Made by a program: the position numbers and the translations under genes. DNA of 64,000 nucleotides, taken from assembly GCF_964188315.1 (NCBI RefSeq), contig NC_135671.1, positions 40,176,001-40,240,000 on the forward strand, in the 5' to 3' direction. This DNA is from Podarcis muralis. Lineage: Eukaryota. Each line of letters starts with the position of its first letter. The first letter of the stretch is position 1. Under the pieces are notes generated by a model, which saw only the letters and a program-made list of their open reading frames with translations, ran no database searches and was not told the origin of the DNA. Below are positions 9,465 through 64,000 of the stretch, one piece after another.

Positions 9465-12400
9465 TGTAATTCTATTACAAAAATGGGAGGAGTTGTGGAA
9501 AAGAAACCCAAAATTCATGGTGTATTATTTAATTAAAGAAAATTTCATGAAAATGCAGTTTTGATGGTATTTAACCCCTTCAAAATTGGCTTAAATAAAA
9601 GTTACAACCGCCTTCATTGATTACTGCCTTGCCATGGTGAAGGGGCTTGAATAACTCAGAGAAGCTATGAGCTATGCCGTGCAGGGCCACCCAAGATGGA
9701 CAGGTCATAGTGGAGAGTTTTGACCAAACGTGATCCACCTGGAGGAGGAACCGGCAAGTCACTCCAGTATCCCTGCCAAGAAAACTCCATGGACAAAGGT
9801 AACAGGCATATAAAGCTTATGACGCTGGAAGATGAGCCCCTCAGGTCCCAAGAAGTCTAACATGCTACTGAGGAAGAGCGGAGGACAAGTACAAGTAGAT
9901 TCAGAGCTGATGAAGCGGCTGGGCCAAAGCCAAAAGGTCGCTCAGTTGCGGATACGCCTGGAAGCAAAAGGAAAGTCCAATGCTGTAAAGAAAAATATTG
10001 CATAGGAACGTGGAATGTAAGAACTATGAACCTTGGTAAGTTGGATGTGGTCAAAAATGAGTTGGCAAGAATAAATATTGACATCCTGGGCATCAGTGAA
10101 CTAAAATGGATGGGAATGGGCAAATTCAGTTCGGATGACCATCATATCTACTACTGTGGGCAAGAATCCCGTAAAAGAAATGGAGTGGCCCTCATAGTCA
10201 ACAAAAGAGTGGCGGGAGCTGTACTGGGATGCAATCTCAAAAATGATAGAATGATCTCGATACGAGTCCAAGGCAGACCTTTTAACATCACAGTAATCCA
10301 AGTTTATGCACCAACTACTGGTGCTGAAGAAACTGAAATTGACCAATTCTATGAAGACTTACAACACCTTATAGAATTGACACCAAAGAAGGATGTTCTT
10401 CTCATTATAGGGGATTGGAATACTAAAGTAGGGAGTCAAGAGATAAAAGGAACAACTGGCAAGTTTGGCCTTGGAGTTCAAAATGAAGCAGGGCAAAGGC
10501 TAATAGAGTTCTGCCAAGAGAACAAGCTGGTCATCACAAACACTCTTTTCCAACAACACAAGAGACGACTCTACACATGGACATCACCAGATGGGCAGCA
10601 TCAAAATCAGATTGATTATATTCTCTGCAGCCAAAGATGGAGACGCTCTATACAGTCAGCAAAAACAAGACCTGGAGCTGACTGTGGCTCAGATCATCAG
10701 CTTCTTATAGCAAAATTCCAGCTTAAACTGAAGAAAGTAGGAAAAACCACTGGACTGGTAAGATACAATCTAAATCAAATCCCTTATGAATACACAGTGG
10801 AAGTGAGGAATAGGTTTAAGGATTTAGATTTGGTGGACAGAGTGCCTGAAGAACTATGGATGGAGGCTCGTAACATTATACAGGAGGCAGCAATGAAAAC
10901 CATCCCAATGAAAAGGAAATACAAGAAAGCAAAGTGGCTGTCCAACGAGGCCTTACAAATAGCGGGGGAGAGAAGGCAAGCAAAATGCGAGGGAGATAGT
11001 GAAAGATACAGGAAATTTAATGCAGATTTCCAAAAAATAGCAAGGTGAGACAAGAAGGCCTTCTTAAACGAGCAATGCAAAGAAATAGAGGAAAACAACA
11101 GAATGGGGAGAACCAGAGATCTGTTCAAGAAAATTGGAGATATGAAAGGAACATTTCATACAAAGATTACCATAATAAAGGACAAAAGTGGTAAGGACCT
11201 AACAGAAGCAGAAGACATCAAGAAGAGGTGGCGAGAATACACAGAGGAATTATACCAGAAAGAGATGGATGTCTCGTACACCCCAGGTAGTGTGGTTGCT
11301 GACCTTGAGCCAGACATCCTGGAAAGTGAAGTCAAATGGGCCTTAGAAAGCACTGCAAATAACAAGGCCAGTGGAAGTGATGGTATTCCAGCTGAACTAC
11401 TTAAAATTTTAAAAGATGATGCTGTTAAGGTGCTACACTCAATATGCCAGCAAGTTTGGAAAACTCAGCAGTGGCCAGAGGATTGGAGAAGATCAGTCTA
11501 CATCCCAGTCCCAAAGAAGGGCAGTGCCAAAGAATGCTCCAACTACCACAAAATTGCACTCATTTCACACGCTAGCAAGGTTATGCTTAAAATTCTACAA
11601 GGTAGGCTCAAGCTGGATTTAGAAGAGGCAGAGGAACCAGAGACCAAATTGCAAACATGCGCTGGATTATGGCGAAAGCTAGAGAGTTCCAGAAAGACAT
11701 CTACTTCTGCTTCATTGACTATGCAAAAGCCTTTGACTGTGTCGACCACAGCAAACTATGGCAAGTTCTTAAAGAAATGGGAGTGCCTGATCACTTCATC
11801 TGACTCCTGAGAAATCTCTATGTGGGACAAGAAGTTACAGTTAGAACTGGATATGGAACAACTGGTTGGTTCAAAATTGGGAAAGGAGTACAACAAGGCT
11901 GTATATTGTCTCCCTGCTTATTTAACTTATATGCAGAATTCATCATGCAAAAGGCTGGGCTGGATGAATCCCAAGCCAGAATTAAGATTGCCAGAAGAAA
12001 TATCAACAACCTCAGATATGCAGATAACACAACCTTGATGGCAGAAAGTGAGGAGGAATTAAAGAACCTTTTAATGAGGGTGAAAGAGGAGAGTACAAAA
12101 TATGGTCTGAAGCTCAACATCAAAAAAACAAAGATCATGGCCACTGGGCCCATCACCTCCTGGCAAATAGAAGGGGAAGAAATGGAGGCAGTGAGAGATT
12201 TTACTTTCTGGGGCTCCATGATCATTGCAGATGGTGACAGCAGTCACGAAATTAAAACACGCCTGCTTCTTGGGAGAAAAGCAATGACAAACGTAGACAG
12301 CATCTTAAAAAGCAGAGACATCACCTTGCCAACAAAGGTCCGTATAGTTAAAGCTATGGTTTTCCCAGTAGTGATGTATGGAAGTGAGAGCTGGACCATA

Positions 12401-13645
12401 AAAAAGGCTGATCGCCGAAGAATTGATGCTTTTGAATTATGGTGCTGGAGGAGACTCTTGAGAGTCCCATGGACCTGCAAGAAGATCAAACGCATCCATT
12501 CTTAAGGAAATCAGACCTGAGTGCTCACTGGAAGGACAGATCCTGAAGCTGAGGCTCCAATACTTTGGCCACCTCATGAGAAGAGGAGACTCCCTGGAAA
12601 AGACCCTGATGTTGGGAAAGATTGAGGGCACAAGGAGAAGGGGACGACAGAGGACAAGATGGTTGGATAGTGTTCTCGAAGCTACCAGCATAAGTTTGAC
12701 CAAACTGCGGGAGGCAGTGGAAGACAGAAGTGCCTGGCGTGCTCTGGTCCATGGGGTCACGAAGTCGGACACGACTAAACGACTAAACAACAACAAAAAG
12801 TTACAATAAATGTTGGAGATGCAAATCCCATGAAGGAATTTTCTTCCACATGTGGTGGACGTGCCTAGAAATTAAAAAATCTGGGACACAGTCTTCGAAG
12901 AGTTAAAAAAATAAAATAAAATTAACATTCAATAAAAACCCGGAAGCATTCCTACTAGGGATTCTAACAAATAACATTCCATATGAAAGAAGAATATTTC
13001 TCTATGCAGCAACCACAGCTAGAGTATTAGTGGCAAAGTATTAGAAGAGCGAGACTATTCTTTCAAGAGAGGAATGGCAACTAAAACTTTGCGAGTACTT
13101 GGGACTTGCAAAAATGACAGAATCAATAAGAAATAAGTCAGCAGATAATCTTTAAAAAGAGTGGGAATGCTTCAGTAATTACTTAAGGAAACAAGGTTCC
13201 ACCTCTGAGATTTGGTTGTTTTTGGAATAACTCCATAAATAGGGATACATCGCTCCCTCATACCAAGGTGAGGAGAAAACATTAAATGCAGGGGGTGGGG
13301 GGAATTAGTAAGATGAAAGTCCACCACATCAGAATAATTAAAATAGGTAAAGAGATTCAATCCATATGGAAAGGTATCATATATGAGAAATGCTATGATA
13401 GGACTGAATCGTATTGAATTGTATCTAACAAAAGATACTTATTGAATCTTTTTTTAAAAAATTGTTATTGTCTTTGTTTTTTCTCGTTTCTTCTTTCTTT
13501 CTTTTTTATATATGTTGAGATGTAAGGTTTCAAAGTCTGATATTATTTGATTTATATAGAAGTTAGCAATGTATGTATTTGTTATCTATGTATTTACTTG
13601 TATATTTTAAAAAGCTGAACAAAAACAAACAAACAAAACCCAAAA
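9465..13645 (+). mobile_element. L1 ORF2 C-terminus plus 3' UTR, split by BovB (9465-9607 and 12807-13645)
   Basis: Joining the flanks gives LQKWEELWK..KCWRCKSHE..FHMWWTC (L1 ORF2 Cys-rich end). A-rich tail at about 13610-13645. Confidence 0.7.
9608..12795 (+). mobile_element. Full-length BovB LINE (APE endonuclease plus RT), inactivated
   Basis: 5' UTR, TWNVRTMN..ILGISEL..QVYAPT..GDWN..IDYIL..GSDH endonuclease, and LRYADNTT RT. Premature TGA at 11046-11048 and frameshifts. CTAAACGACTAAAC(AAC)n tail. 11-bp TSD AAAAGTTACAA (9597-9607, 12796-12806). Confidence 0.95.
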
Positions 13646-19061: not shown

Positions 19062-19997
19062 TTAGTTGACTTTGCTTCCAAAAAGCTTCCTCAGGGCTTC
19101 CTTCATCTTGTCATTTCTCAGAGTGTAGATGAAGGGGTTCAGCATGGGTGTAACCACAGTGTACATGATGGCAGCCAGTGTGTCCTTCTCAGCTGAGAAG
19201 CTGGATGAGGGCTGGAAGTAGACCCAGATGACAGTGCCATAAAATAGGGTCACCACAGCCAGGTGGGACCCACAGGTAGAGAAAGCCTTCCACTTTCCCT
19301 CCTTAGATGGAACCCTCAACACAGCCATCAGGATGCGTGTATATGACAGGACAATGAATGCTAGAGCTCCATTAACAATCAGAGCTCCTTCTGTGTGCAC
19401 TACCAGAGTGTTCAGATAGGTGTTGGAGCAAGAGATCTTCAGCAATGGGAAGACATCACAAAAGAAGTGAGGCACTTGATTGGAGGCACAGAAAGAGAGG
19501 TGGGATGTTAGGAGGGTGTGCAGGAGAGCATGGAGATGAGAGGTCAGCCAGGAGGCAGCCACCATTAGTAGGCAGGTCCTGTTGCTCATCACTGTGGCAT
19601 AATGCAGAGGCCGACAGATGGCCACATAGCGGTCCAGTGCCATGGATGCCAAAAGAAAGCTGTCACTGATGCCAAAAGCAATGAAGAAGTACATCTGTGC
19701 CAGGCACCCACCATATGAGATCTTCCTCACTCCCGAGACTGTATTGGCCAACATCTGGGGTACGATGGTTGTTGTGAAGCAGATGTCCACAAAGGAGAGG
19801 TTGCTGAGGAAGAAGTACATGGGAGTATGGAGGAGGTGGCTATCCAACCTTATGGCCAGTACAATAATCAGATTTCCCAGCACTGTGATGATGTATATAA
19901 TCAGGAAGGTAGTGAAGAACAACATGTTCCAGTCTTGCTGGCTCGTGATGCCTAGGAGGATGAATTCAGAGACAGTGGTCCTGTTGTCTATCTCCAT
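19062..19997 (-). CDS. OR1Q1: Olfactory receptor, family 1, OR1Q1-like, 311 aa, intact
   Basis: All OR motifs intact ([45 protein letters not shown]). KISCSNTYLNTLVVHTEGA..GALAFI matches recalled human OR1Q1. Confidence 0.85.
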   Translation of the reverse strand: MEIDNRTTVSEFILLGITSQQDWNMLFFTTFLIIYIITVLGNLIIVLAIRLDSHLLHTPMYFFLSNLSFVDICFTTTIVPQMLANTVSGVRKISYGGCLAQMYFFIAFGISDSFLLASMALDRYVAICRPLHYATVMSNRTCLLMVAASWLTSHLHALLHTLLTSHLSFCASNQVPHFFCDVFPLLKISCSNTYLNTLVVHTEGALIVNGALAFIVLSYTRILMAVLRVPSKEGKWKAFSTCGSHLAVVTLFYGTVIWVYFQPSSSFSAEKDTLAAIMYTVVTPMLNPFIYTLRNDKMKEALRKLFGSKVN

Positions 19998-24726: not shown

Positions 24727-25656
24727 TTAGGTAACTTTGCTTCCAAAAAGCTTTCTCAGGGCTTCCTTCATCTTGTCATTTCTCAGAGTGTAGATGAAGG
24801 GATTCAGCATGGGTGTAACCACTGTATACATGATGGCAGCCAGTGTGTCCTTCTCAGCTGAGAAGCTGGATGAGGGCTGGAAGTAGACCCAGATGACAGT
24901 GCCACCACCACCGGGTCACCACAGCCAGGTGGGACCCACAGGTGGAGGCGGCTTTCCACTTTCCTTCAGTTGATGGAATTTTCAACACAGCCATCAGGAT
25001 GCATGCATAGGAGAGGCCAATGAACAACAGAACTCCACTGACCACCACAGCACCTTCTGTATGAACTAGCAGGACGTTCAAGTCTGTGTTAGAACAAGAG
25101 ATCTTGAGCAATGGGAAGATGTCACAGAAGAAGTGAAGCACCCGATTGGAGGCACAGAAAGAGAGGCTGGACATCAGGAAGTTGTGCAAGAGAGCATGGA
25201 GGTGAGAGACCAGCCAAGAGACAGCTACGAGGAGCAGGCAGACCTGGCTGCTCATGACTGTGGCATAATGCAGAGGCCAGCCGATGGCCACATAGCGATC
25301 CAATGCCATGGATGCCAAGAGAAAGTTGTTGATCGTTCCAAATGCAAGGAAAAAGTGCACCTGCGTGAAGCACCCACCATGTGAGATCTTCCTCACTTTG
25401 CAGAATGTGCCAGCCAACATCTTGGGCACAATGGTGGTTGTGAAATAGATGTCTGCCAGTGAGAGGTTGCTGAGGAAGAAGTACATGGGGGTATGGAGGA
25501 GATGGTCATCCAGGCTTATGGCCAAGACAGTGGTAAGATTTCCAGTCATTGTGGTGATGTACATGATTAATAAGATAATAGTCCATTCCAGTCCTGCTGA
25601 CTTGAGATGCCAAGGAGGATGAATTCAGAAGCAGTGGTCTTGTTGTCTTTCTTCAT
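24727..25656 (-). pseudogene. OR1Q1-like pseudogene, paralogue of 19062-19997
   Basis: ATG at 25656 reads MKKDNKTTASEFILLGISSQQDWN, then a deletion frameshift and TAA in TM1. A second +1 frameshift lies in TM6 (HLAVVT then cggtggtggt). Confidence 0.9.
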
Positions 25657-32071: not shown

Positions 32072-32605
32072 CAAAAGATGAGTTCAATATTTAGTTATAA
32101 AACTGACAGATCAGTTCCAAGTTCTTTATGAAAACAATAAAATTATTTAGAGATTGTCAGTGTGGGATATCCCACACAATTGAGTTTGAGCCGGGGTGTC
32201 AGGGAACTGGGGCCTGAGAAGGAGGAAACGCTGGGGAAATATAGAGAGCAGCCTCTGATAATGAGCAGCTGCACCTCGTCAGAGAGGGGCTGTCAGGAAG
32301 CAATGGATCAGGGAGGGAGAAGCAACTTCCAGGGCTTAAGGGAGGAAGGAAGAGGGGAGGCTTCAGGAAGTTGTTGTGCTGGAGAGGACGAAGGGAGGGT
32401 CCAGTCTCGGCTAAGAAGGACATGCTTTTACGAGCTCCGGATTGTAAATAATATAATGGACTTGATAAATCTTGTAAAGCTGGCTGGAGTCCCGGGCTGT
32501 TATCTCTTCTAGCACCCACCAATCATCCTGACATGGGGCGGGGAGACACAGAACAAAAATAGATGTCCCACTGTCAGCAAGATATATGAGAAGAGGGCGT
32601 GTGTG

Positions 32606-33558
32606 TTAAGTTGCTGCAACCTTGAGACCAAGAGTCTTTTTGAGGGCAGCATGAACCTCCCGGTTTCGGAGACTGTAGACCATTGGGTTGAGAAGCGGAG
32701 TGACCACACAGTAGCTCACAGAGACAAGTCGGTCCCTGTCTGGCTGAAAGCTGGATTTGGGTCTGAGGTATATGAAGGAAGCACAGCCAAAGTGGATGAC
32801 CACCACAGTAAGATGAGCCCCACAAGTGGAGAAGGCTCTCCGGCGCCCCCCAGGGGCAGAAACTCTCAACACAGCTCTCATGATAAATGTGTACGAGAGA
32901 AGAATCAGAAACAAGGGGAGGCCCAGAACAAACAGACCAAGGAGAAGCAAGGCTACCTCGCTAAAATGTGTATCTGCACAGGCCAGGTCCAGGAGAGGTG
33001 GAATATCGCAGAAGAAATGCTGGAGGCGGTTATGGCCTGGGCAGAAGGGAAGATGGAAGACAGTGGTGGTCATGCCAGCGCCAACACAGAAACCAATGGA
33101 AGTGCAGAGTGAGATCAGCTTGGTACACATCTGTCCGCCCATTCGTGTCACATAGTGCAGTGGGTCACGAACTGCCACTGAGCGGTCATACCCCATGGCT
33201 GCCAAGAGGAAGCAGTTAGTAGATGCCAACGAAGAGGCAAAGAACATTTGTGCCACGCAGCCAGGGAAGGAGATGGAAGAAACACCATCAGATGACGCCA
33301 AACCTGTTAATGCTTTGGGCACCAAAGCTATGCTTATAAAGGTCTCTGAGAGGGCCAGGGAGCAGAGGAAGATGTACATTGGTGTCTGAAGGTGGGTATC
33401 CTTCCATACAGCCAAGCCCAGCAGGACATTGCCAGACAAGGTGAGGAGGTAGAAGAAGAGGAAGACAGCCAGTACGATAAAGCGCAGCTGCGGCAAGTCG
33501 GACAGGCCAATCAGCAGGAATTCAGATGGCCTTGTTTGGTTCTCCTGCGCATCTTTAG
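32606..33558 (-). CDS. Olfactory receptor, family 10 (OR10Z1-like), main coding exon with no in-frame ATG
   Basis: Open frame ..[73 protein letters not shown]. An in-frame TAA lies upstream. Acceptor ccaatttttacag at 33559. Confidence 0.8.
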
Positions 33559-34143
33559 CTGTAAAAATTGGTGAGGAGATTTGTGGTTAATGACAGGGCA
33601 CCATCCAAGGCACCCTGCTTCATTGCCTAAGACAAAATGTTAAGGTGTGCACCCTGCCCCCCACAGCTGCTGCCCCTTAAAAAGCCTCGCAGCTGCGGCT
33701 TCTGGGTTTTAATAAGCTCTCGCAAGAGGTCCATGAGATCTTACCAGAACTCAGAAGCCACAACCACTTCTCCTTGCTTCTCTGGTGGTGAGGGAAGGTA
33801 GGGAACCACCCACCAGAGGAGAAGTTAGGAGCAGCAATGACAGCGGTGAAATCTTGTGAGAGTTCTGTGAGGTCTTGCCAGAAGCTGTCACCAATTCTTT
33901 TTGCTGTTAGTGATGGAAGAGGCATAGCTCCTGCAAGAACACAACCCCTTGGAATTTCACTGCCCATTGTGTCTGGTTCAAGGACACGGAGATAATTGTT
34001 GTCCAGCCCCTGGCTATTGAGCAGTTTAGTCCTCAGTGCCAGAAGTACTCGCTGTTAACTGTAGTTCTACGCAGGGTCAACTCCCTCTTTGTTGATTCTT
34101 GCACAAGTAAAAACACCTTTTAGTGCCTGGTGAATGGATACAT

Positions 34144-34401
34144 CAGAGGTTGGCAAGGTTTACCCCTCCCAGGCTGGTTCACTCCAGCGGAGATCCCTCT
34201 GTGGGCCGGATTGTGTGCCCGCGCCCACGATTTCCGGCGTCTGCGCAGACATGATTTCCGGTGCTGCGGAAGTGAGTCCCTGTGCCGTCCTGCGCCAGTT
34301 TAGCTAAGTGCGCGGGGACTCATGAGTGGGCAGCTCGTGGGCTGGTTAAATGACCCCCGTAGGCTGCTTGTGGCCCATGGGCCTTAGGTTTCCTAAACCT
34401 G
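34144..34401. mobile_element. hAT MITE
   Basis: 8-bp TSD GGATACAT (34136-34143, 34402-34409). Imperfect CAG..CTG TIRs. Confidence 0.8.
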
Positions 34402-35182
34402 GGATACATGCACCAAACCAAAGGCTGCATTCAATGATGCATACCATCCAACATTTCTCCGACTAAAATAGGGACGTCCCATTTCATAACGATAATTTTA
34501 CTATTTATACCCCACACATCTTACTAGGCTACCCCCATCACTCTGGGCAGCTTCCAACATATATAAAACCATAATACAACATTAAACAATACAAAAAGCT
34601 TCCCTATACAGGATTGCCTTCAGATGGGTCAGGGGTTAGATAACTCCATACCGTCCAACATTTATCCAATGCAAATAGGGATGTCCTAAGGAAAAGCGGG
34701 ACATTTCAGGATCAAATCAGAAACCGGCACGGCTTCTCTAATTTAGGGATGTCCCTGGATAACAGGGACACTTGGAGGCTCCGGGATAAACTACGGAGAA
34801 CATTCATCAACACAAGGATTTCTCCTTGGGTAATGGAACTTTCTCTTTCTCCTCCCCTGCACTCCCCTAAATCTGTTCTGGAGGTTCTGCCAACTCCATA
34901 TCATAGTGTTAACAAAGCAGAGTTCTCAGAATTCCTTGCAGGATGACATGACTCTTAAAGTGGTATAGGGATGCTTTGCCTGTATTATGTGGGTGTGAGC
35001 CTTGTTCCAAAAGGGGAAGCTGAGATTTGTGTGATGCAGCAGGGTAACAGAGCCGCACCTTCTGTCCTTTCCCCCCAGTTTGTGTAGCAAGGACTTGAGA
35101 GAGTTGTTCCCAAAGGGATGGAGATCAGAGCCCATGGCCCCACCCAGCCCCTCCCTGATCTTGTCTGTGATCCTAGTCTTAC

Positions 35183-35247
35183 CCGCCATGCACCTAGAAC
35201 CCCCAAGGCCTCTTCAGCCCTCTCTCTTCATTGCTGCTGTGCATGGC
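35183..35247 (-). CDS. Predicted 65-bp upstream exon supplying ATG GCG G (35189-35183) to the OR10 gene
   Basis: Acceptor ctcctccttctctgtcttgcag and donor GG|GTAAGA. The phase-1 join gives MAAKDAQENQT.., 960 nt, 319 aa. Confidence 0.6.
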
Positions 35248-36286
35248 CTGCAAGACAGAGAAGGAGGAGTGTGTTTTCACATGTTATCCTACAATTGCCT
35301 CTTGCATTGCTTTAAGGTACAGCCTCCACTGACTAAAGTGTTTCTTGGATTTAAAAATGACCCTGAGAGGCACAAGTAGCATTCAAAAGGTGCTTCTCAG
35401 GGCAACAGCTTCCAGGGGGTAACTATGTTTACCTATTTCAGCAAAAAAGGGAGGCAACAAAAGTTTTGTGATACCTTAAAGACAAAACAATAATTGCATA
35501 GACTTTCATGATAAAAGTCCATTTCATCAGATAAAGTGGACTCCAGTGGTCCGTGAGCTTCATTCAGGTGATCTGCAACATGTCTCTAGATTTGTAATTA
35601 AAGATGGCAGACAGCACACACCCTTCATGTTAAATGCTCAAATTGATTTTAAATTTTTATTGCGTTTGTTTCTTACATTATATTTTATTGTATTACAATT
35701 GGAATTCATTTACAATTACTGCAATTACCCTGCTGCACTCCAATAGTGAGAGGTGCCGCGTCCTCCATTTCTGGCCCCTGAGGAATATCTTTCCATGCTT
35801 TGGGGTTCCGCTTTTGGTAAATAACAATAAAACAGTCCATTTGTCTGAATATGAGTGACAGTGATGCAGGGTAGGGTGATTGCCAGATGATATTGAACCA
35901 CACAATGGGAATGGGTTTTTTTAAAAAAAATGAATGCATTATTAACAACCCATGACTCCTTCCCTCCAGGCCACTCTGAGTGGTATACCATATTACGTAG
36001 TATTACTACTTTGTTAGTCAAAATGGGAAAATTTTTGTACCACCATCTATAGATGCCTGACATTCTAAGGTGTGGGAAATGACTTGTATGGTTCAGCTGG
36101 CAAGAATAAGAGGAGGCAAACCGAGTGAAGCTCTGGTCAGTTTCTTGGCTGTGCTGGCAGAGGCTGATAGGAGCTGGAGTCCAGCAACATCTGCAGGGTC
36201 ACAGGCTGCCCAGCTATTTTCTAAGTAGGGCTACAAGTAGGAATGGGGGATAAATTGGTTTGCATTTTGATGTGAATTAGAATAAT

Positions 36287-36558
36287 AGAATCATAGAATT
36301 GTAGAGTTGTAGGGGACCCCAAGGGTCATCTAGTCCAACCCCATGCAATGCAGGAAACTCAGCTAAAGTATCCAAGACAGGTGGCTACCCAGCCTCTGTT
36401 TAACAACCTCCAATAAAGGAGGGTCCACAACCTCCCGAAGGAGACAGTTCCACCGCCAAACAGCTCTTCCTGTCTGAAAGTTCTTCTTGATGGTTAGTCC
36501 TCTCAGGACTCTCTTTCCCAGGCTAAACATACTCAGGTCCCTCAACCATTCCCCATAT
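36287..36558 (-). mobile_element. CR1 3' fragment
   Basis: agaatcatagaattgtagagttg..cctgcattgc tail on the minus strand. Confidence 0.85.
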
Positions 36559-36945: not shown

Positions 36946-37515
36946 AACTTGGATGAAGGTATTGAGGGGGTGCTCATCAAATTTTCAGATGACGCCAAAC
37001 TGGGTGGGTGGGTAGCTAATGCGGCAGACACAGAACCAGAATTCAAAATGACCTTAATAGATATTTCTATTAAGAAATATATTAACAAGCTGGAACATGT
37101 GCATGGGAGGGCAACCAAGATGATCAAGGGTCTGGAAACCAAGACTACTGCGGAACAGTTGAGGGAATTGGGTATATTTAGCCTGGTAAAGAGGCAACTG
37201 AGAGGAGAATTGATAGCCTCTTCTAACATCTAAAGGGCTCTCACATGGAGGATGGAGCAAGCTTTTTCCCTCCTGCTTTATAGGGGAGGACCCGAACCAA
37301 TGGGTTCAAGTCACAAGAAAAGACATAAACATCAGGAAGAACTTTATGACAGTAAGAGCTGTTGGACAGTAGAACAGAGTCCTTCTATGGGAGGCTTTAA
37401 AGCAGAAGTTGGAGGCCCACCTTTCACGGATGCTTGAGTTGAGATTCCTGCATTGCAGAGGGTTGGATGGGGTGGCCCTTGGGGTCCCTTCCTAATCTAC
37501 AATTCTATCATTCTA
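36946..37515 (+). mobile_element. CR1 LINE 3' fragment with RT remnant
   Basis: DEGIEGVLIKFSDDAKLGG..RATKMIKGLE, followed by the CR1 3' UTR and tail. Confidence 0.88.
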
Positions 37516-61740: not shown

Positions 61741-64000
61741 TGTTGTTTAGTCGTTTAGTCGTGTCCGACTCTTCGTGACCCCATGGACCAGAGCACGCCA
61801 GGCACTTCTGTCTTCCACTGTCTCCCGCAGTTTGGTCAGACTCATGTTTGTAGCTTCAAGAACACTGTCCAACCATCTCGTCCTCTGTCATCCCCTTCTC
61901 CTTGTGCCCTCCATCTTTCCCAACATCAGGGTCTTTTCCAGGGAGTTCTCATGAGGTGGCCAAGGTATTGGAGCCTCAGCTTCAGGATCTGTCCTTCCAG
62001 TGAGCACTCAGGGCTGATTTCCTTCAGAATGGAGAGGTTTGATCTTCTTGCAGTCCATGGGACTCTCAAGAGTCTCCTCCAGCACCAGAATTCAAAAGCA
62101 TCAATTCTTCGGCGATCAGCCTTTTTTATGGTCCAGCTCTCACTTCCATACATCACTACTGGGAAAACCATGGCTTTAACTATACGGACCTTTGTTGGCA
62201 AGGTGATGTCTCTGCTTTTTAAGATGCTTAGGTTTGCCATCGCCTTTCTCCCAAGGAGCAGGCGTCTTTTAATTTCGTGACTGCTGTCACCATCTGCAGT
62301 GATCATGGAGCCCAAGAAAGTAAAATCTCTCACTGCCTCCATTTCTTCCCCTTCTATTTGCCAGGAGGTGATGGGACCAGTGGCCATGATCTTCGTTTTT
62401 TTGATGTTGAGCTTCAGACCATATTTTGCGCTCTCCTCTTTCACCCTCATTAAAAGGTTCTTTAATTCCTCCTCACTTTCTGCCATCAAGGTTGTGTCAT
62501 CTGCATTTCTGAGGTTGTTGATATTTCTTCCGGCGATCTTAATTCCGGCTAGGGATTCATCCAGCCCTGCCTTTTGCATGATGAATTCTGCATATAAGTT
62601 AAATAAGCAGGGAGACAATATACAGCCTTGTCGTACTCCTTTCCCAATTTTGAACCAATCAGTTGTTCCATATCCAGTTCTAACTGTAGCTTCTTGTCCC
62701 ACATAGAGATTTCTCAGGAGACAGATGAGGTGATCAGGCACTCCCATTTCTTTGAGAACTTGCCATAGTTTGCTGTGATCGACACAGTCAAAGGCTTTTG
62801 CATAGTCAATGAAGCAGAAGTAGATGTCTTTCTGGAACTCTCTAGCTTTCTCCATAATCCAGCACATGTTTGCAATTTGGTCTCTGGTTCCTCTGCCCCT
62901 TTCAAATCCAGCTTGCACTTCTGGGAGTTCTCGATCCACATACTGCTTGAGCCTTCCTTGTAGAATTTTAAGCATAACCTTGCTAGCGTGTGAAATGAGT
63001 GCAATTGTGCGGTAGTTGGAGCATTCTTTGGCACTGCCTTTCTTTGGGATTGGGATGTAGACTGATCTTCTCCAATCTTCTGGCCACTGCTGAGTTTTCC
63101 AAACTTGCTGGCATATTGAGTGTAGCACCTTAACAACATCATCTTTTAATATTTTAAGTAGTTCAGCTGGAATACCATCACTTCCACTGGCCTTGTTATT
63201 TGCAGTGCTTTCTAAGGCCCATTTGACTTCACTTTCCAGGATGTCTGGCTCAAGGTCAGCAACCACACTACCTGGGGTGTACGAGACATCCATCTCTTTC
63301 TGGTATAATTCCTCTGTGTATTCTTGCCACCTCTTCTTGATGTCTTCTGCTTCTGTTAGGTCCTTACCACTTTTGTCCTTTATTATGATAATCTTTGTAT
63401 GAAATGTTCCTTTCATATCTCCAATTTTCTTGAACAGATCTCTGGTTCTTCCCGTTCTGTTGTTTTCCTCTATTTCTTTGCATTGCTCGTTTAAGAAGGC
63501 CTTCTTGTCTCTCCTTGCTATTTTTTGGAAGTCTGCATTCAATTTCCTGTATCTTTCACTATCTCCCTCGCATTTTGCTTGCCTTCTCTCCCCCGCTAAT
63601 TGTAAGGCCTCATTGGACAGCCACTTTGCTTTCTTGCATTTCCTTTTCATTGGGATGGTTTTCGTTGCTGCCTCCTATATAATGTTACGAGCCTCCATCC
63701 ATAGTTCTTCAGGCACTCTGTCCACCAAATCTAAATCCTTAAACCTGTTCCTCACTTCCACTGTGTATTCATAAAGGATTTGACTTAGATTGTATCTTAC
63801 CGGCCCAGTGGTTTTTCCTACTTTCTTCAGTTTAAGCTTGAATTTTGCTATAAGAAGCTGATGATCTGAGCCACAGTCCGCTCCAGGTCTTGTTTTTGCT
63901 GACTGTATAGAGCTTCTCCATCTTTGGCTGCAGAGAATATAATCAATCTGATTTCGATGCTGCCCATCTGGTGATGTCCATGTGTAGAGTCGTCTCTTGT
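61741..64000 (-). mobile_element. Long BovB LINE, runs off the window edge
   Basis: 574-aa RT ORF (61926-63650) with YADD changed to NADD, a frameshifted C-terminus and a BovB tail at 61741. Confidence 0.95.

What the first reader, a model, noticed from the sequence alone, without database searches (positions are those of the whole stretch)
32606..35247. OR10-family gene whose start codon appears to sit in an upstream exon (split-CDS OR, possibly rescuing a frameshift)
Seen: the main exon is open for a full OR but has no in-frame ATG before an upstream TAA, and it begins right behind an acceptor (ttttacag|CT AAA GAT GCG CAG GAG AAC). About 1.6 kb upstream lies a 65-bp segment (35247-35183) with a strong acceptor and donor, ending ATG GCG G|GTAAGA. 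Splicing gives G+CT = Ala and an exact 960-nt, 319-aa ORF (MAAKDAQENQT..) that keeps the glycosylation site. The main exon also has an out-of-frame ATG (33552) reading ATG-CG-CAG, one G short of ATG GCG CAG GAG AAC. Inference: an ancestral single-exon start lost 1 bp and a 5' UTR exon now supplies the start. Known: a minority of mammalian ORs have CDSs split over two exons. Two short uORFs (ATGs at 35244 and 35231) precede the new ATG.
Basis: partly seen in the sequence, partly recalled or inferred. Interest (0 to 1): 0.8.

Follow-up and report, generated by a model that had tools for sequence, protein, structure and literature searches.

The report
Wall-lizard smell receptor with split start
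A wall-lizard smell-receptor gene has no usable start codon in its main exon and most likely borrows one from a small exon 1.6 kb upstream, a layout already known from mouse and human and already present, letter for letter, in the public automatic annotation of this genome.

Summary
The window is Podarcis muralis (assembly GCA_964188315.1). Joining 35189-35183 to 33558-32606 gives a 960-nt, 319-aa protein identical to RefSeq XP_028567462.2, so the model is already public as an automatic prediction.

It is not an assembly slip. An independent DNA run spans the site without an indel, and Lacerta agilis and Zootoca vivipara have the same out-of-frame ATG and no in-frame ATG.

The main exon is under purifying selection (dN/dS 0.2-0.3 among lacertids, p = 4e-5; 0.14 against a gecko), so the gene works and needs a start from elsewhere.

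The 65-nt upstream exon has the best acceptor of 458 AG sites and a top-five donor of 340 GT sites. Its acceptor, ATG and donor are kept in all three lacertids. It has the best donor score of the 17 in-phase ATG-donor candidates kept in all three species.

No transcript evidence was obtained: three RNA runs had no reads on the gene. The exon is no more conserved overall than its surroundings.

The "lost 1 bp" idea fits the family's usual M-x-Q-x-N-x-T start, but the loss appears shared with a gecko, so it is old. Earlier notes of this scan report other split receptor genes elsewhere in this genome. This is an ordinary new member of a known kind.

The parts
32606..33558 (-). Main coding exon of an OR10Z1-like olfactory receptor (953 nt with the stop). 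It enters in phase 1: the first two bases, CT, complete an Ala codon.
   Evidence: Pfam 7tm_4 E = 2.4e-42. 97% identical to L. agilis OR10Z1-like. dN/dS 0.2-0.3 within lacertids.
33559..33590 (-). Splice acceptor region: AG at 33560-33559, a pyrimidine tract, and a TTAAC branch-point-like motif that overlaps the in-frame TAA (33589-33587).
   Evidence: Ranked 9th of 458 AG sites. The segment aligns across lacertids, the gecko and the P0003 species.
33550..33552 (-). Out-of-frame ATG, the likely relic of the family's ordinary start. With one more base it would read M-(A/V)-Q-E-N-Q-T.
   Evidence: Met lies 4 residues before the N of NxS/T in 47 of 87 homologues of 330 aa or less. There is a 1-nt gap right after this ATG against the P0003 species.
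33559..35182 (-). Proposed intron of 1624 nt, GT..AG.
   Evidence: The RefSeq CDS range is 2584 nt, which equals 35189-32606.
35183..35247 (-). 65-nt upstream exon. The start ATG is at 35189-35187, then GCG G, and the donor GT is at 35182-35181. The acceptor AG is at 35249-35248.
   Evidence: Acceptor, ATG and G|GTAAG are conserved in L. agilis and Zootoca. Best acceptor of 458 sites. Donor score 4.8, the highest among the 17 conserved in-phase candidates.
35194..35244 (-). Upstream ORF 1 (MHSSNEERGLKRPWGF*). Its ATG and stop are kept in all three lacertids.
35214..35231 (-). Upstream ORF 2 (MKREG*), in frame with the proposed start. It is open through to that start in Zootoca. Its ATG is absent in L. 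agilis.
34143..34402 (-). High-copy repeat insertion inside the intron, absent from Zootoca. It holds the counterpart of the first coding exon of the L. agilis RefSeq model, which is disabled here (ATG to CTG, donor GT to GC).
   Evidence: (word depth in the thousands).

Best explanation
This is a working OR10Z1-like olfactory receptor gene of Podarcis muralis whose coding sequence is split over two exons. The main exon carries the whole seven-helix receptor but no in-frame start, because the family's usual ATG is one base out of frame. A 65-nt upstream exon (35247-35183) ends in ATG GCG G. When spliced to the acceptor at 33559|33558 it supplies Met-Ala and the first base of an Ala codon, giving a 319-aa receptor, MAAKDAQENQT.., that keeps the N-terminal glycosylation site.

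Shown: the sequence anatomy, its identity with the RefSeq model, the absence of an assembly error, purifying selection on the main exon, and conservation of the exon's signals in three lacertid genera.

Inferred: that this splice is made in olfactory neurons, and that the third AUG of the exon is used by leaky scanning past two short upstream ORFs.
For: - The spliced translation is identical to XP_028567462.2. The RefSeq CDS range of 2584 nt equals 35189-32606.
- The newest Zootoca model (MEAKDVQ..) uses the orthologous exon.
- There is no in-frame ATG, and the same out-of-frame ATG is present, in L. agilis and Zootoca.
- An independent P. muralis DNA contig spans 32504-34201 with 0 gaps.
- dN/dS is 0.20-0.30 among lacertids (16 nonsynonymous versus about 21 synonymous changes, binomial p = 4e-5) and 0.14 against the gecko. 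The CDS differs by about 2.4-3.0%, against 8-9% in the flanks.
- The acceptor is the best of 458 and the donor is in the top five of 340.
- It has the highest donor score of the 17 in-phase ATG-donor candidates kept in all three species.
- A polymorphism in the exon (35185, Ala2/Glu2) leaves the ATG and the donor intact.
- Split ORs of exactly this class are documented in mouse and human (PMC7055050).
Against: - No transcript evidence: three RNA runs, of unknown and probably non-olfactory tissue, gave zero reads on either exon.
- The exon as a whole is no more conserved than neighbouring non-coding DNA (59th percentile). Keeping about 10 key bases in three close species has roughly a 1-in-4 chance under neutrality.
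- RefSeq pipelines chose four different upstream solutions across five annotations, which suggests model-completion guesses rather than RNA support.
- The proposed AUG has a weak context (T at -3). It follows two upstream AUGs with G at -3, and the first uORF stops only 4 nt before it.
- Only 6.7 kb upstream could be compared across species.
Confidence: 0.6

Rival explanations
1. The gene is split and functional, but the start codon comes from a different upstream exon. That exon could lie further than 6.7 kb away, or it could be the weaker conserved candidate ATG AAG G|GTGTGT at 35628-35621.
For: Selection on the main exon demands a start but does not say which one. There are 133 in-phase ATG..GT candidates in 6.7 kb and 17 conserved ones. 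The RefSeq models of L. agilis, older Zootoca and older P. muralis use other solutions.
Against: The L. agilis exon lies in a repeat absent from Zootoca and is disabled in P. muralis. The 223-nt candidate ending at 33744 is not kept in all three species. Candidate 35628 has a weaker donor (3.1 against 4.8), and no good acceptor is listed near it.
Confidence: 0.17
2. It is a pseudogene or untranslated locus. The start was lost, and the open frame and the upstream ATG-donor are coincidences picked up by an annotation pipeline that must find a start.
For: No RNA reads. The exon is not specially conserved. The receptor's DRY-type motif reads DRS. The reference haplotype carries three derived amino-acid changes against one silent change relative to run X9.
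Against: There is significant purifying selection within lacertids and against the gecko, with no stop or frameshift in four species and two P. muralis haplotypes, although the missing start is shared by all of them. The one indel in the main exon, in Zootoca, is 3 nt. DRS is shared with the gecko, so it is an old, tolerated state.
Confidence: 0.1
3. The frameshift is not fixed. Some P. muralis carry a single-exon allele with one more base after ATG 33552, or the site is mis-assembled. The older RefSeq protein XP_028567462.1 begins MLQENQT, as if it read ATG yTG CAG.
For: The older model starts exactly at the relic ATG. No exon end ATGYTNCAGGT exists in the 64-kb window that could produce it by splicing.
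Against: Run X9 has the same F156/Q242/V6 haplotype as the older model and shows no indel. L. agilis and Zootoca read ATGTGCAG. The older locus could not be fetched. A C/T heterozygote at 33549 written as CT in a noisy long-read consensus would explain the older model, but that is inference.
Confidence: 0.06
4. Translation starts inside the main exon at a non-AUG codon, for example the in-frame GTG of the ancestral Val allele at 33550-33548.
For: GTG is in frame in L. agilis, Zootoca and run X9.
Against: The reference allele has GCG there. Non-AUG starts are inefficient (established knowledge). No other strong near-cognate codon lies between the TAA and the NQT site.
Confidence: 0.03

Closest known systems
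Split olfactory receptor genes of mouse and human (Barnes et al. 2020, BMC Genomics 21:196, PMC7055050): 41 mouse and 13 human ORs. The first class consists of loci formerly called pseudogenes for lack of a conserved start.
   Same: The main exon lacks the conserved initiator ATG. An ATG in the adjacent upstream exon restores an ORF of about 320 aa. The initiator and the junction are conserved in orthologues. Upstream ORFs are common in OR leaders (54-86% of genes in that paper).
   Different: This is a squamate, not a mammal. Only 7 nt of coding sequence sit in the upstream exon. No RNA-seq support is available here, whereas junction reads and expression level were part of the mammalian evidence.
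RefSeq automatic model XP_028567462.2, olfactory receptor 10Z1-like [Podarcis muralis]
   Same: Identical protein and identical CDS span.
   Different: It is an uncurated prediction. The earlier version (.1) and the models of L. agilis and older Zootoca use other starts, so the annotation alone does not establish the exon.
Mammalian OR10Z1 and other family-10 receptors
   Same: 50-52% identity. Same 7tm_4 fold. Same N-terminal pattern M-x-Q-x-N-x-T if the relic ATG is read with one extra base.
   Different: Those genes have a single coding exon with the Met 4 residues before the glycosylated Asn. Here that ATG is out of frame. Identity below 60% does not support subfamily Z membership by the usual nomenclature rule (my knowledge).

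Membership tests
Vertebrate olfactory receptor (class A GPCR, Pfam 7tm_4), family OR10 | Significant match to the 7tm_4 profile over all seven helices | tested here: met
   PF13853 E = 2.4e-42, residues 33-310 on profile positions 1-277 of 280.
Vertebrate olfactory receptor (class A GPCR, Pfam 7tm_4), family OR10 | At least 40% identity to named family-10 members (nomenclature rule, from my knowledge) | tested here: met
   50-52% to mammalian OR10Z1 and 47-50% to OR10R2, OR10T2, OR10K1 and OR10J members.
Vertebrate olfactory receptor (class A GPCR, Pfam 7tm_4), family OR10 | Signature motifs ([15 protein letters not shown]-type, KAFSTC.SHL, PxLNPxIYSLRN) and the N-terminal NxS/T site | tested here: met
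   [29 protein letters not shown] and NQT are present. The DRY-type motif reads MGYDRSVAV, as in the gecko orthologue.
Split-CDS olfactory receptor (Barnes et al. 2020, class 1) | Main exon intact but without the conserved initiator ATG or any downstream ATG giving more than 300 aa | tested here: met
   An in-frame TAA lies at 33589. The first in-frame ATG is in PMYIFLC, about residue 70.
Split-CDS olfactory receptor (Barnes et al. 2020, class 1) | An ATG in an upstream exon that splices in frame to give a full-length ORF of about 320 aa | tested here: met
   35189-35183 plus 33558-32606 gives 319 aa with no internal stop. This is in silico only.
Split-CDS olfactory receptor (Barnes et al. 2020, class 1) | Initiator Met and splice junction conserved in orthologues | tested here: met
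   Acceptor, ATG, G|GTAAG and the main-exon acceptor are identical in position in L. agilis and Zootoca. The species are close, so this is a weak test. No counterpart was detectable in the gecko.
Split-CDS olfactory receptor (Barnes et al. 2020, class 1) | RNA-seq reads across the junction, with expression like intact ORs in olfactory tissue | tested here: inconclusive
   Three RNA runs of this species gave zero reads on either exon. All laid reads sat on repeats. No olfactory-tissue run was identified.

The most novel reading that the evidence does not exclude
The ordinary OR10Z1 start was put out of frame by a one-base deletion before geckos and lacertids diverged (well over 150 million years ago, by my knowledge of squamate dating). 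The receptor has since been kept under purifying selection with a start supplied from outside the old start site. That would make it a very old split olfactory receptor outside mammals, with different lineages possibly using different solutions: an upstream exon in lacertids and an in-exon upstream ATG in the gecko.
Probability: 0.4. Interest if true: 0.4.

Novelty: new member of a known kind. Interest (0 to 1): 0.25.

Why it matters
Surveys of olfactory receptor repertoires usually count a locus without a start in its single coding exon as a pseudogene. If lizards, like mouse and human, keep working receptors whose start sits in an upstream exon, repertoire counts for squamates are biased low.

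This locus gives a clean case. The gene is demonstrably constrained and the start is demonstrably absent from the main exon. The practical gain is small, because the public annotation already carries the model and the scan has met the same layout elsewhere in this genome.

Tried and rejected
- RNA evidence: three RNA runs (two bulk, one single-cell) gave no reads on the gene, so nothing follows for or against the junction. No indexed RNA run holds the exon.
- Exon-wide conservation as support: rejected. The exon sits at the 59th percentile of 65-nt windows.
- Homologue of the upstream exon in the gecko locus: nothing above noise.
- The L. agilis RefSeq first exon as the true start: rejected. 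It is repeat-derived, absent in Zootoca, and has CTG and a GC donor in P. muralis.
- The long candidate ATG 33967 to donor 33744 (a 74-aa extension): not kept in all three species.
- Splice origin for the older MLQENQT model: no matching exon end in the window. The older loci are not on record.
- O/E-type promoter site TCCCNNGGGA near the exon: no site within the locus. The three in the window are at chance level.
- Literature on split ORs in squamates: none found with the terms used.
- My donor and acceptor scores use approximate consensus frequencies recalled from memory, not a trained model, so ranks are indicative only.

Full report
**What is in the sequence**

Read on the minus strand, the receptor frame is open from 33558 to a stop at 32608-32606.
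- Upstream it is closed by an in-frame TAA at 33589-33587, with no ATG in between.
- The frame begins right behind ttttacag|CT AAA GAT GCG CAG GAG AAC.
- The ATG at 33552 is out of frame and ends after 13 codons.
- At 35247-35183 lies a 65-nt segment preceded by ctctgtcttgcag and followed by gtaaga. It ends ATG GCG G.
- Joining 35189-35183 to 33558-32606 gives 960 nt and 319 aa, MAAKDAQENQT.., with one terminal stop.
- The two earlier ATGs in the segment open ORFs of 16 and 5 codons.

**Where it comes from and what is already public**

The protein is an olfactory receptor (Pfam 7tm_4, E = 2.4e-42). Its nearest relative is Lacerta agilis "olfactory receptor 10Z1-like" at 97% identity. Next come a gecko (Paroedura picta, 73%), an unnamed assembly protein (P0003, 63%) and mammalian OR10Z1 (50-52%).

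The 90% cluster of the L. agilis protein holds P. muralis XP_028567462.2, which is 319 aa and begins MAAKDAQENQT. Its locus contains the window's sequence exactly. Its CDS range of 2584 nt equals 35189-32606.

L. agilis and Zootoca vivipara both read ttttacag|CTAAAGATGTGCA.., with the same out-of-frame ATG and no in-frame start.

A contig from an independent P. muralis DNA run (X9) covers 32504-34201 with nine substitutions and no gap. One substitution, 33549 G>A, changes GCG to GTG (Ala6Val), which is the state of the other lacertids. Another, 35185 G>T, changes the upstream exon's GCG to GAG (Ala2Glu), again the state of the other lacertids. Both leave the ATG and the donor intact.

One loose end remains. 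The older RefSeq version (.1) begins MLQENQT, as if one extra base followed the relic ATG.
- No exon end in the window could give this by splicing, and the older locus is not retrievable.
- Run X9 carries the same F156/Q242 haplotype as that older model and has no indel.
- I therefore favour an error in the older assembly over a segregating single-exon allele.

**The gene is constrained, so it needs a start**

The table gives the pairwise counts between the three lacertids.

| Pair | Nonsynonymous | Synonymous | dN/dS |
|---|---|---|---|
| P. muralis - L. agilis | 11 | 12 | 0.30 |
| P. muralis - Zootoca | 11 | 18 | 0.20 |
| L. agilis - Zootoca | 10 | 11 | 0.30 |

- Roughly 16 nonsynonymous of 37 changes fall on the three-species tree, against 75% expected under neutrality (p = 4e-5).
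- Against the gecko, dN/dS is 0.14.
- Upstream non-coding DNA differs by 8-9%, while the coding exon differs by about 2.4-3.0% (23-29 of about 950 sites).
- The only indel in the exon is a 3-nt one in Zootoca.
- No species has a stop or frameshift.

A gene kept like this while lacking an in-frame ATG in all three genera must start somewhere else.

In the 6.7 kb upstream there are 133 ATG..GT combinations in the right phase in P. muralis, so such a combination alone means little. Seventeen sit in the same alignment columns in all three lacertids.

By my approximate scores, the acceptor in front of 35247 is the best of 458 AG sites by a wide margin (10.8 against 7.0). The donor ranks about 4th-5th of 340 GT sites. 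The segment therefore looks like a true internal exon. I estimate roughly a few percent for this arising by chance together with an in-phase ATG.

The acceptor, first upstream ORF, ATG and G|GTAAG are kept in L. agilis and Zootoca. The newest Zootoca RefSeq model (MEAKDVQ..) uses the orthologous exon.

Four points count against it.
- The exon is not more conserved than its surroundings.
- The species are close.
- The pipelines have given four different answers over five annotations.
- The AUG has a weak context behind two better ones.

The L. agilis model's first exon can be dismissed. It lies in a high-copy repeat that Zootoca lacks, and in P. muralis it has CTG for ATG and GC for GT.

**Transcripts**

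No indexed RNA run holds the gene. Two bulk and one single-cell RNA run of the species, sampled at about 2 billion letters each, gave no read on either exon. Every RNA read that was laid sat on repeats and ran on into unlike sequence. The tissues are unknown and probably not olfactory, so this neither supports nor refutes the junction.

**The "lost one base" idea**

Among the homologues of 330 aa or less, the first Met lies four residues before the glycosylated Asn in 47 of 87. The starts include MGQTN.T, MVQKNAT and MVQNNAT.

Read with one more base, the lacertid relic ATG gives M-(V/A)-Q-E-N-Q-T, which has the same position and pattern. In the five-way DNA alignment a 1-nt gap falls right after that ATG in all lacertids, relative to the P0003 species, which has cag|CTC ATG GTA TTC CAG AAG AAT.

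The gecko has the same spacing, with AGG in place of ATG. Its annotated ORF instead runs on to an ATG 25 codons upstream in the same exon. If the gecko gene is the orthologue, the loss predates the gecko-lacertid split. That would make it an old state, not a recent accident rescued in this species.

The taxon of P0003 is unknown and the alignment is short, so the dating is tentative.

The 30 nt before the acceptor, including a TTAAC/TTAAT branch-point-like motif, align across all five sequences. This speaks for an old, working acceptor.

**Comparison with what is known**

Barnes et al. 2020 (PMC7055050) described 41 mouse and 13 human ORs with the coding region split over two exons. One class had been called pseudogenes because the main exon lacks the initiator. 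Those authors required conservation of the initiator and junction in orthologues and had RNA-seq junction support.

This locus meets the sequence criteria and the orthologue criterion within Lacertidae. The RNA criterion could not be tested. I found no paper on split ORs in squamates with the terms used.

Earlier notes of this scan report other split-CDS receptor clusters elsewhere in the same genome, with follow-ups reaching the same general reading. I did not test those.

**Verdict**

| Reading | My estimate |
|---|---|
| The gene is functional and takes its start from some upstream exon | about 0.75-0.8 |
| That exon is 35247-35183 | about 0.6 |

It is a further member of a known kind and is already present in the public automatic annotation. 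Interest is low to moderate.

Noticed in passing
window 34143-34402 (minus strand), L001:6001-6070: A repeat of about 260 nt is present in Podarcis and Lacerta but absent from Zootoca. The L. agilis RefSeq model XP_033029787.1 takes its 23-aa first coding exon (MAQGLASGAPEIASAQTQTSEIV) from this repeat, so that annotation is probably a model-completion artefact.
   Followed up: partly
window 33549, 33099, 32841, 35185: The reference haplotype carries four derived amino-acid states (Ala6, Ser156, Arg242 and Ala2 in the upstream exon). Run X9, the older RefSeq model and the other lacertids have Val, Phe, Gln and Glu. In the main exon there are three replacement differences against one silent one, too few to test.
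   Followed up: partly
L004 (Zootoca), orthologue of window 35231-35189: In Zootoca the second ATG of the upstream exon is in frame and open through to the annotated start (MKRECWRGLGGSRCMEAKD..). A 14-aa longer N-terminus is therefore possible there. P. muralis has a TGA in this stretch, and L. agilis lacks the ATG.
   Followed up: no
older RefSeq protein XP_028567462.1 (P0123): It begins MLQENQT at the position of the relic ATG, which implies one extra base in the older P. muralis assembly. This is either an assembly indel or a real single-exon allele.
   Followed up: partly
window 33561-33590 and the aligned parts of L001, L002, L004, L005: The 30 nt before the acceptor (TTAAC/TTAAT .. TCTCCT .. 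AG|CT) align between lacertids, a gecko and the unnamed P0003 species, although synonymous sites are saturated. This looks like a conserved branch point and pyrimidine tract. It also suggests the gecko's annotated single-exon extension may really be intron.
   Followed up: no
window 37019-37215 (+) and 36231-36427: There is strong RNA-seq depth in bulk runs (up to 88-fold on one strand), but 99% of the reads run on into unlike sequence. These are expressed copies of interspersed repeats elsewhere in the genome, not transcription of this locus.
   Followed up: no
window 24854-25564 (-): An olfactory receptor ORF of only 236 aa starts inside helix 1 and has a garbled C-terminus. It is a likely pseudogene next to the intact paralogue at 19062-19997.
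   Followed up: no
window 10026-12505 (+) and 61926-63650 (-): Two copies of a LINE-type endonuclease and reverse-transcriptase ORF lie here. The first is broken into three ORFs and the second is a 574-aa ORF.
   Followed up: no
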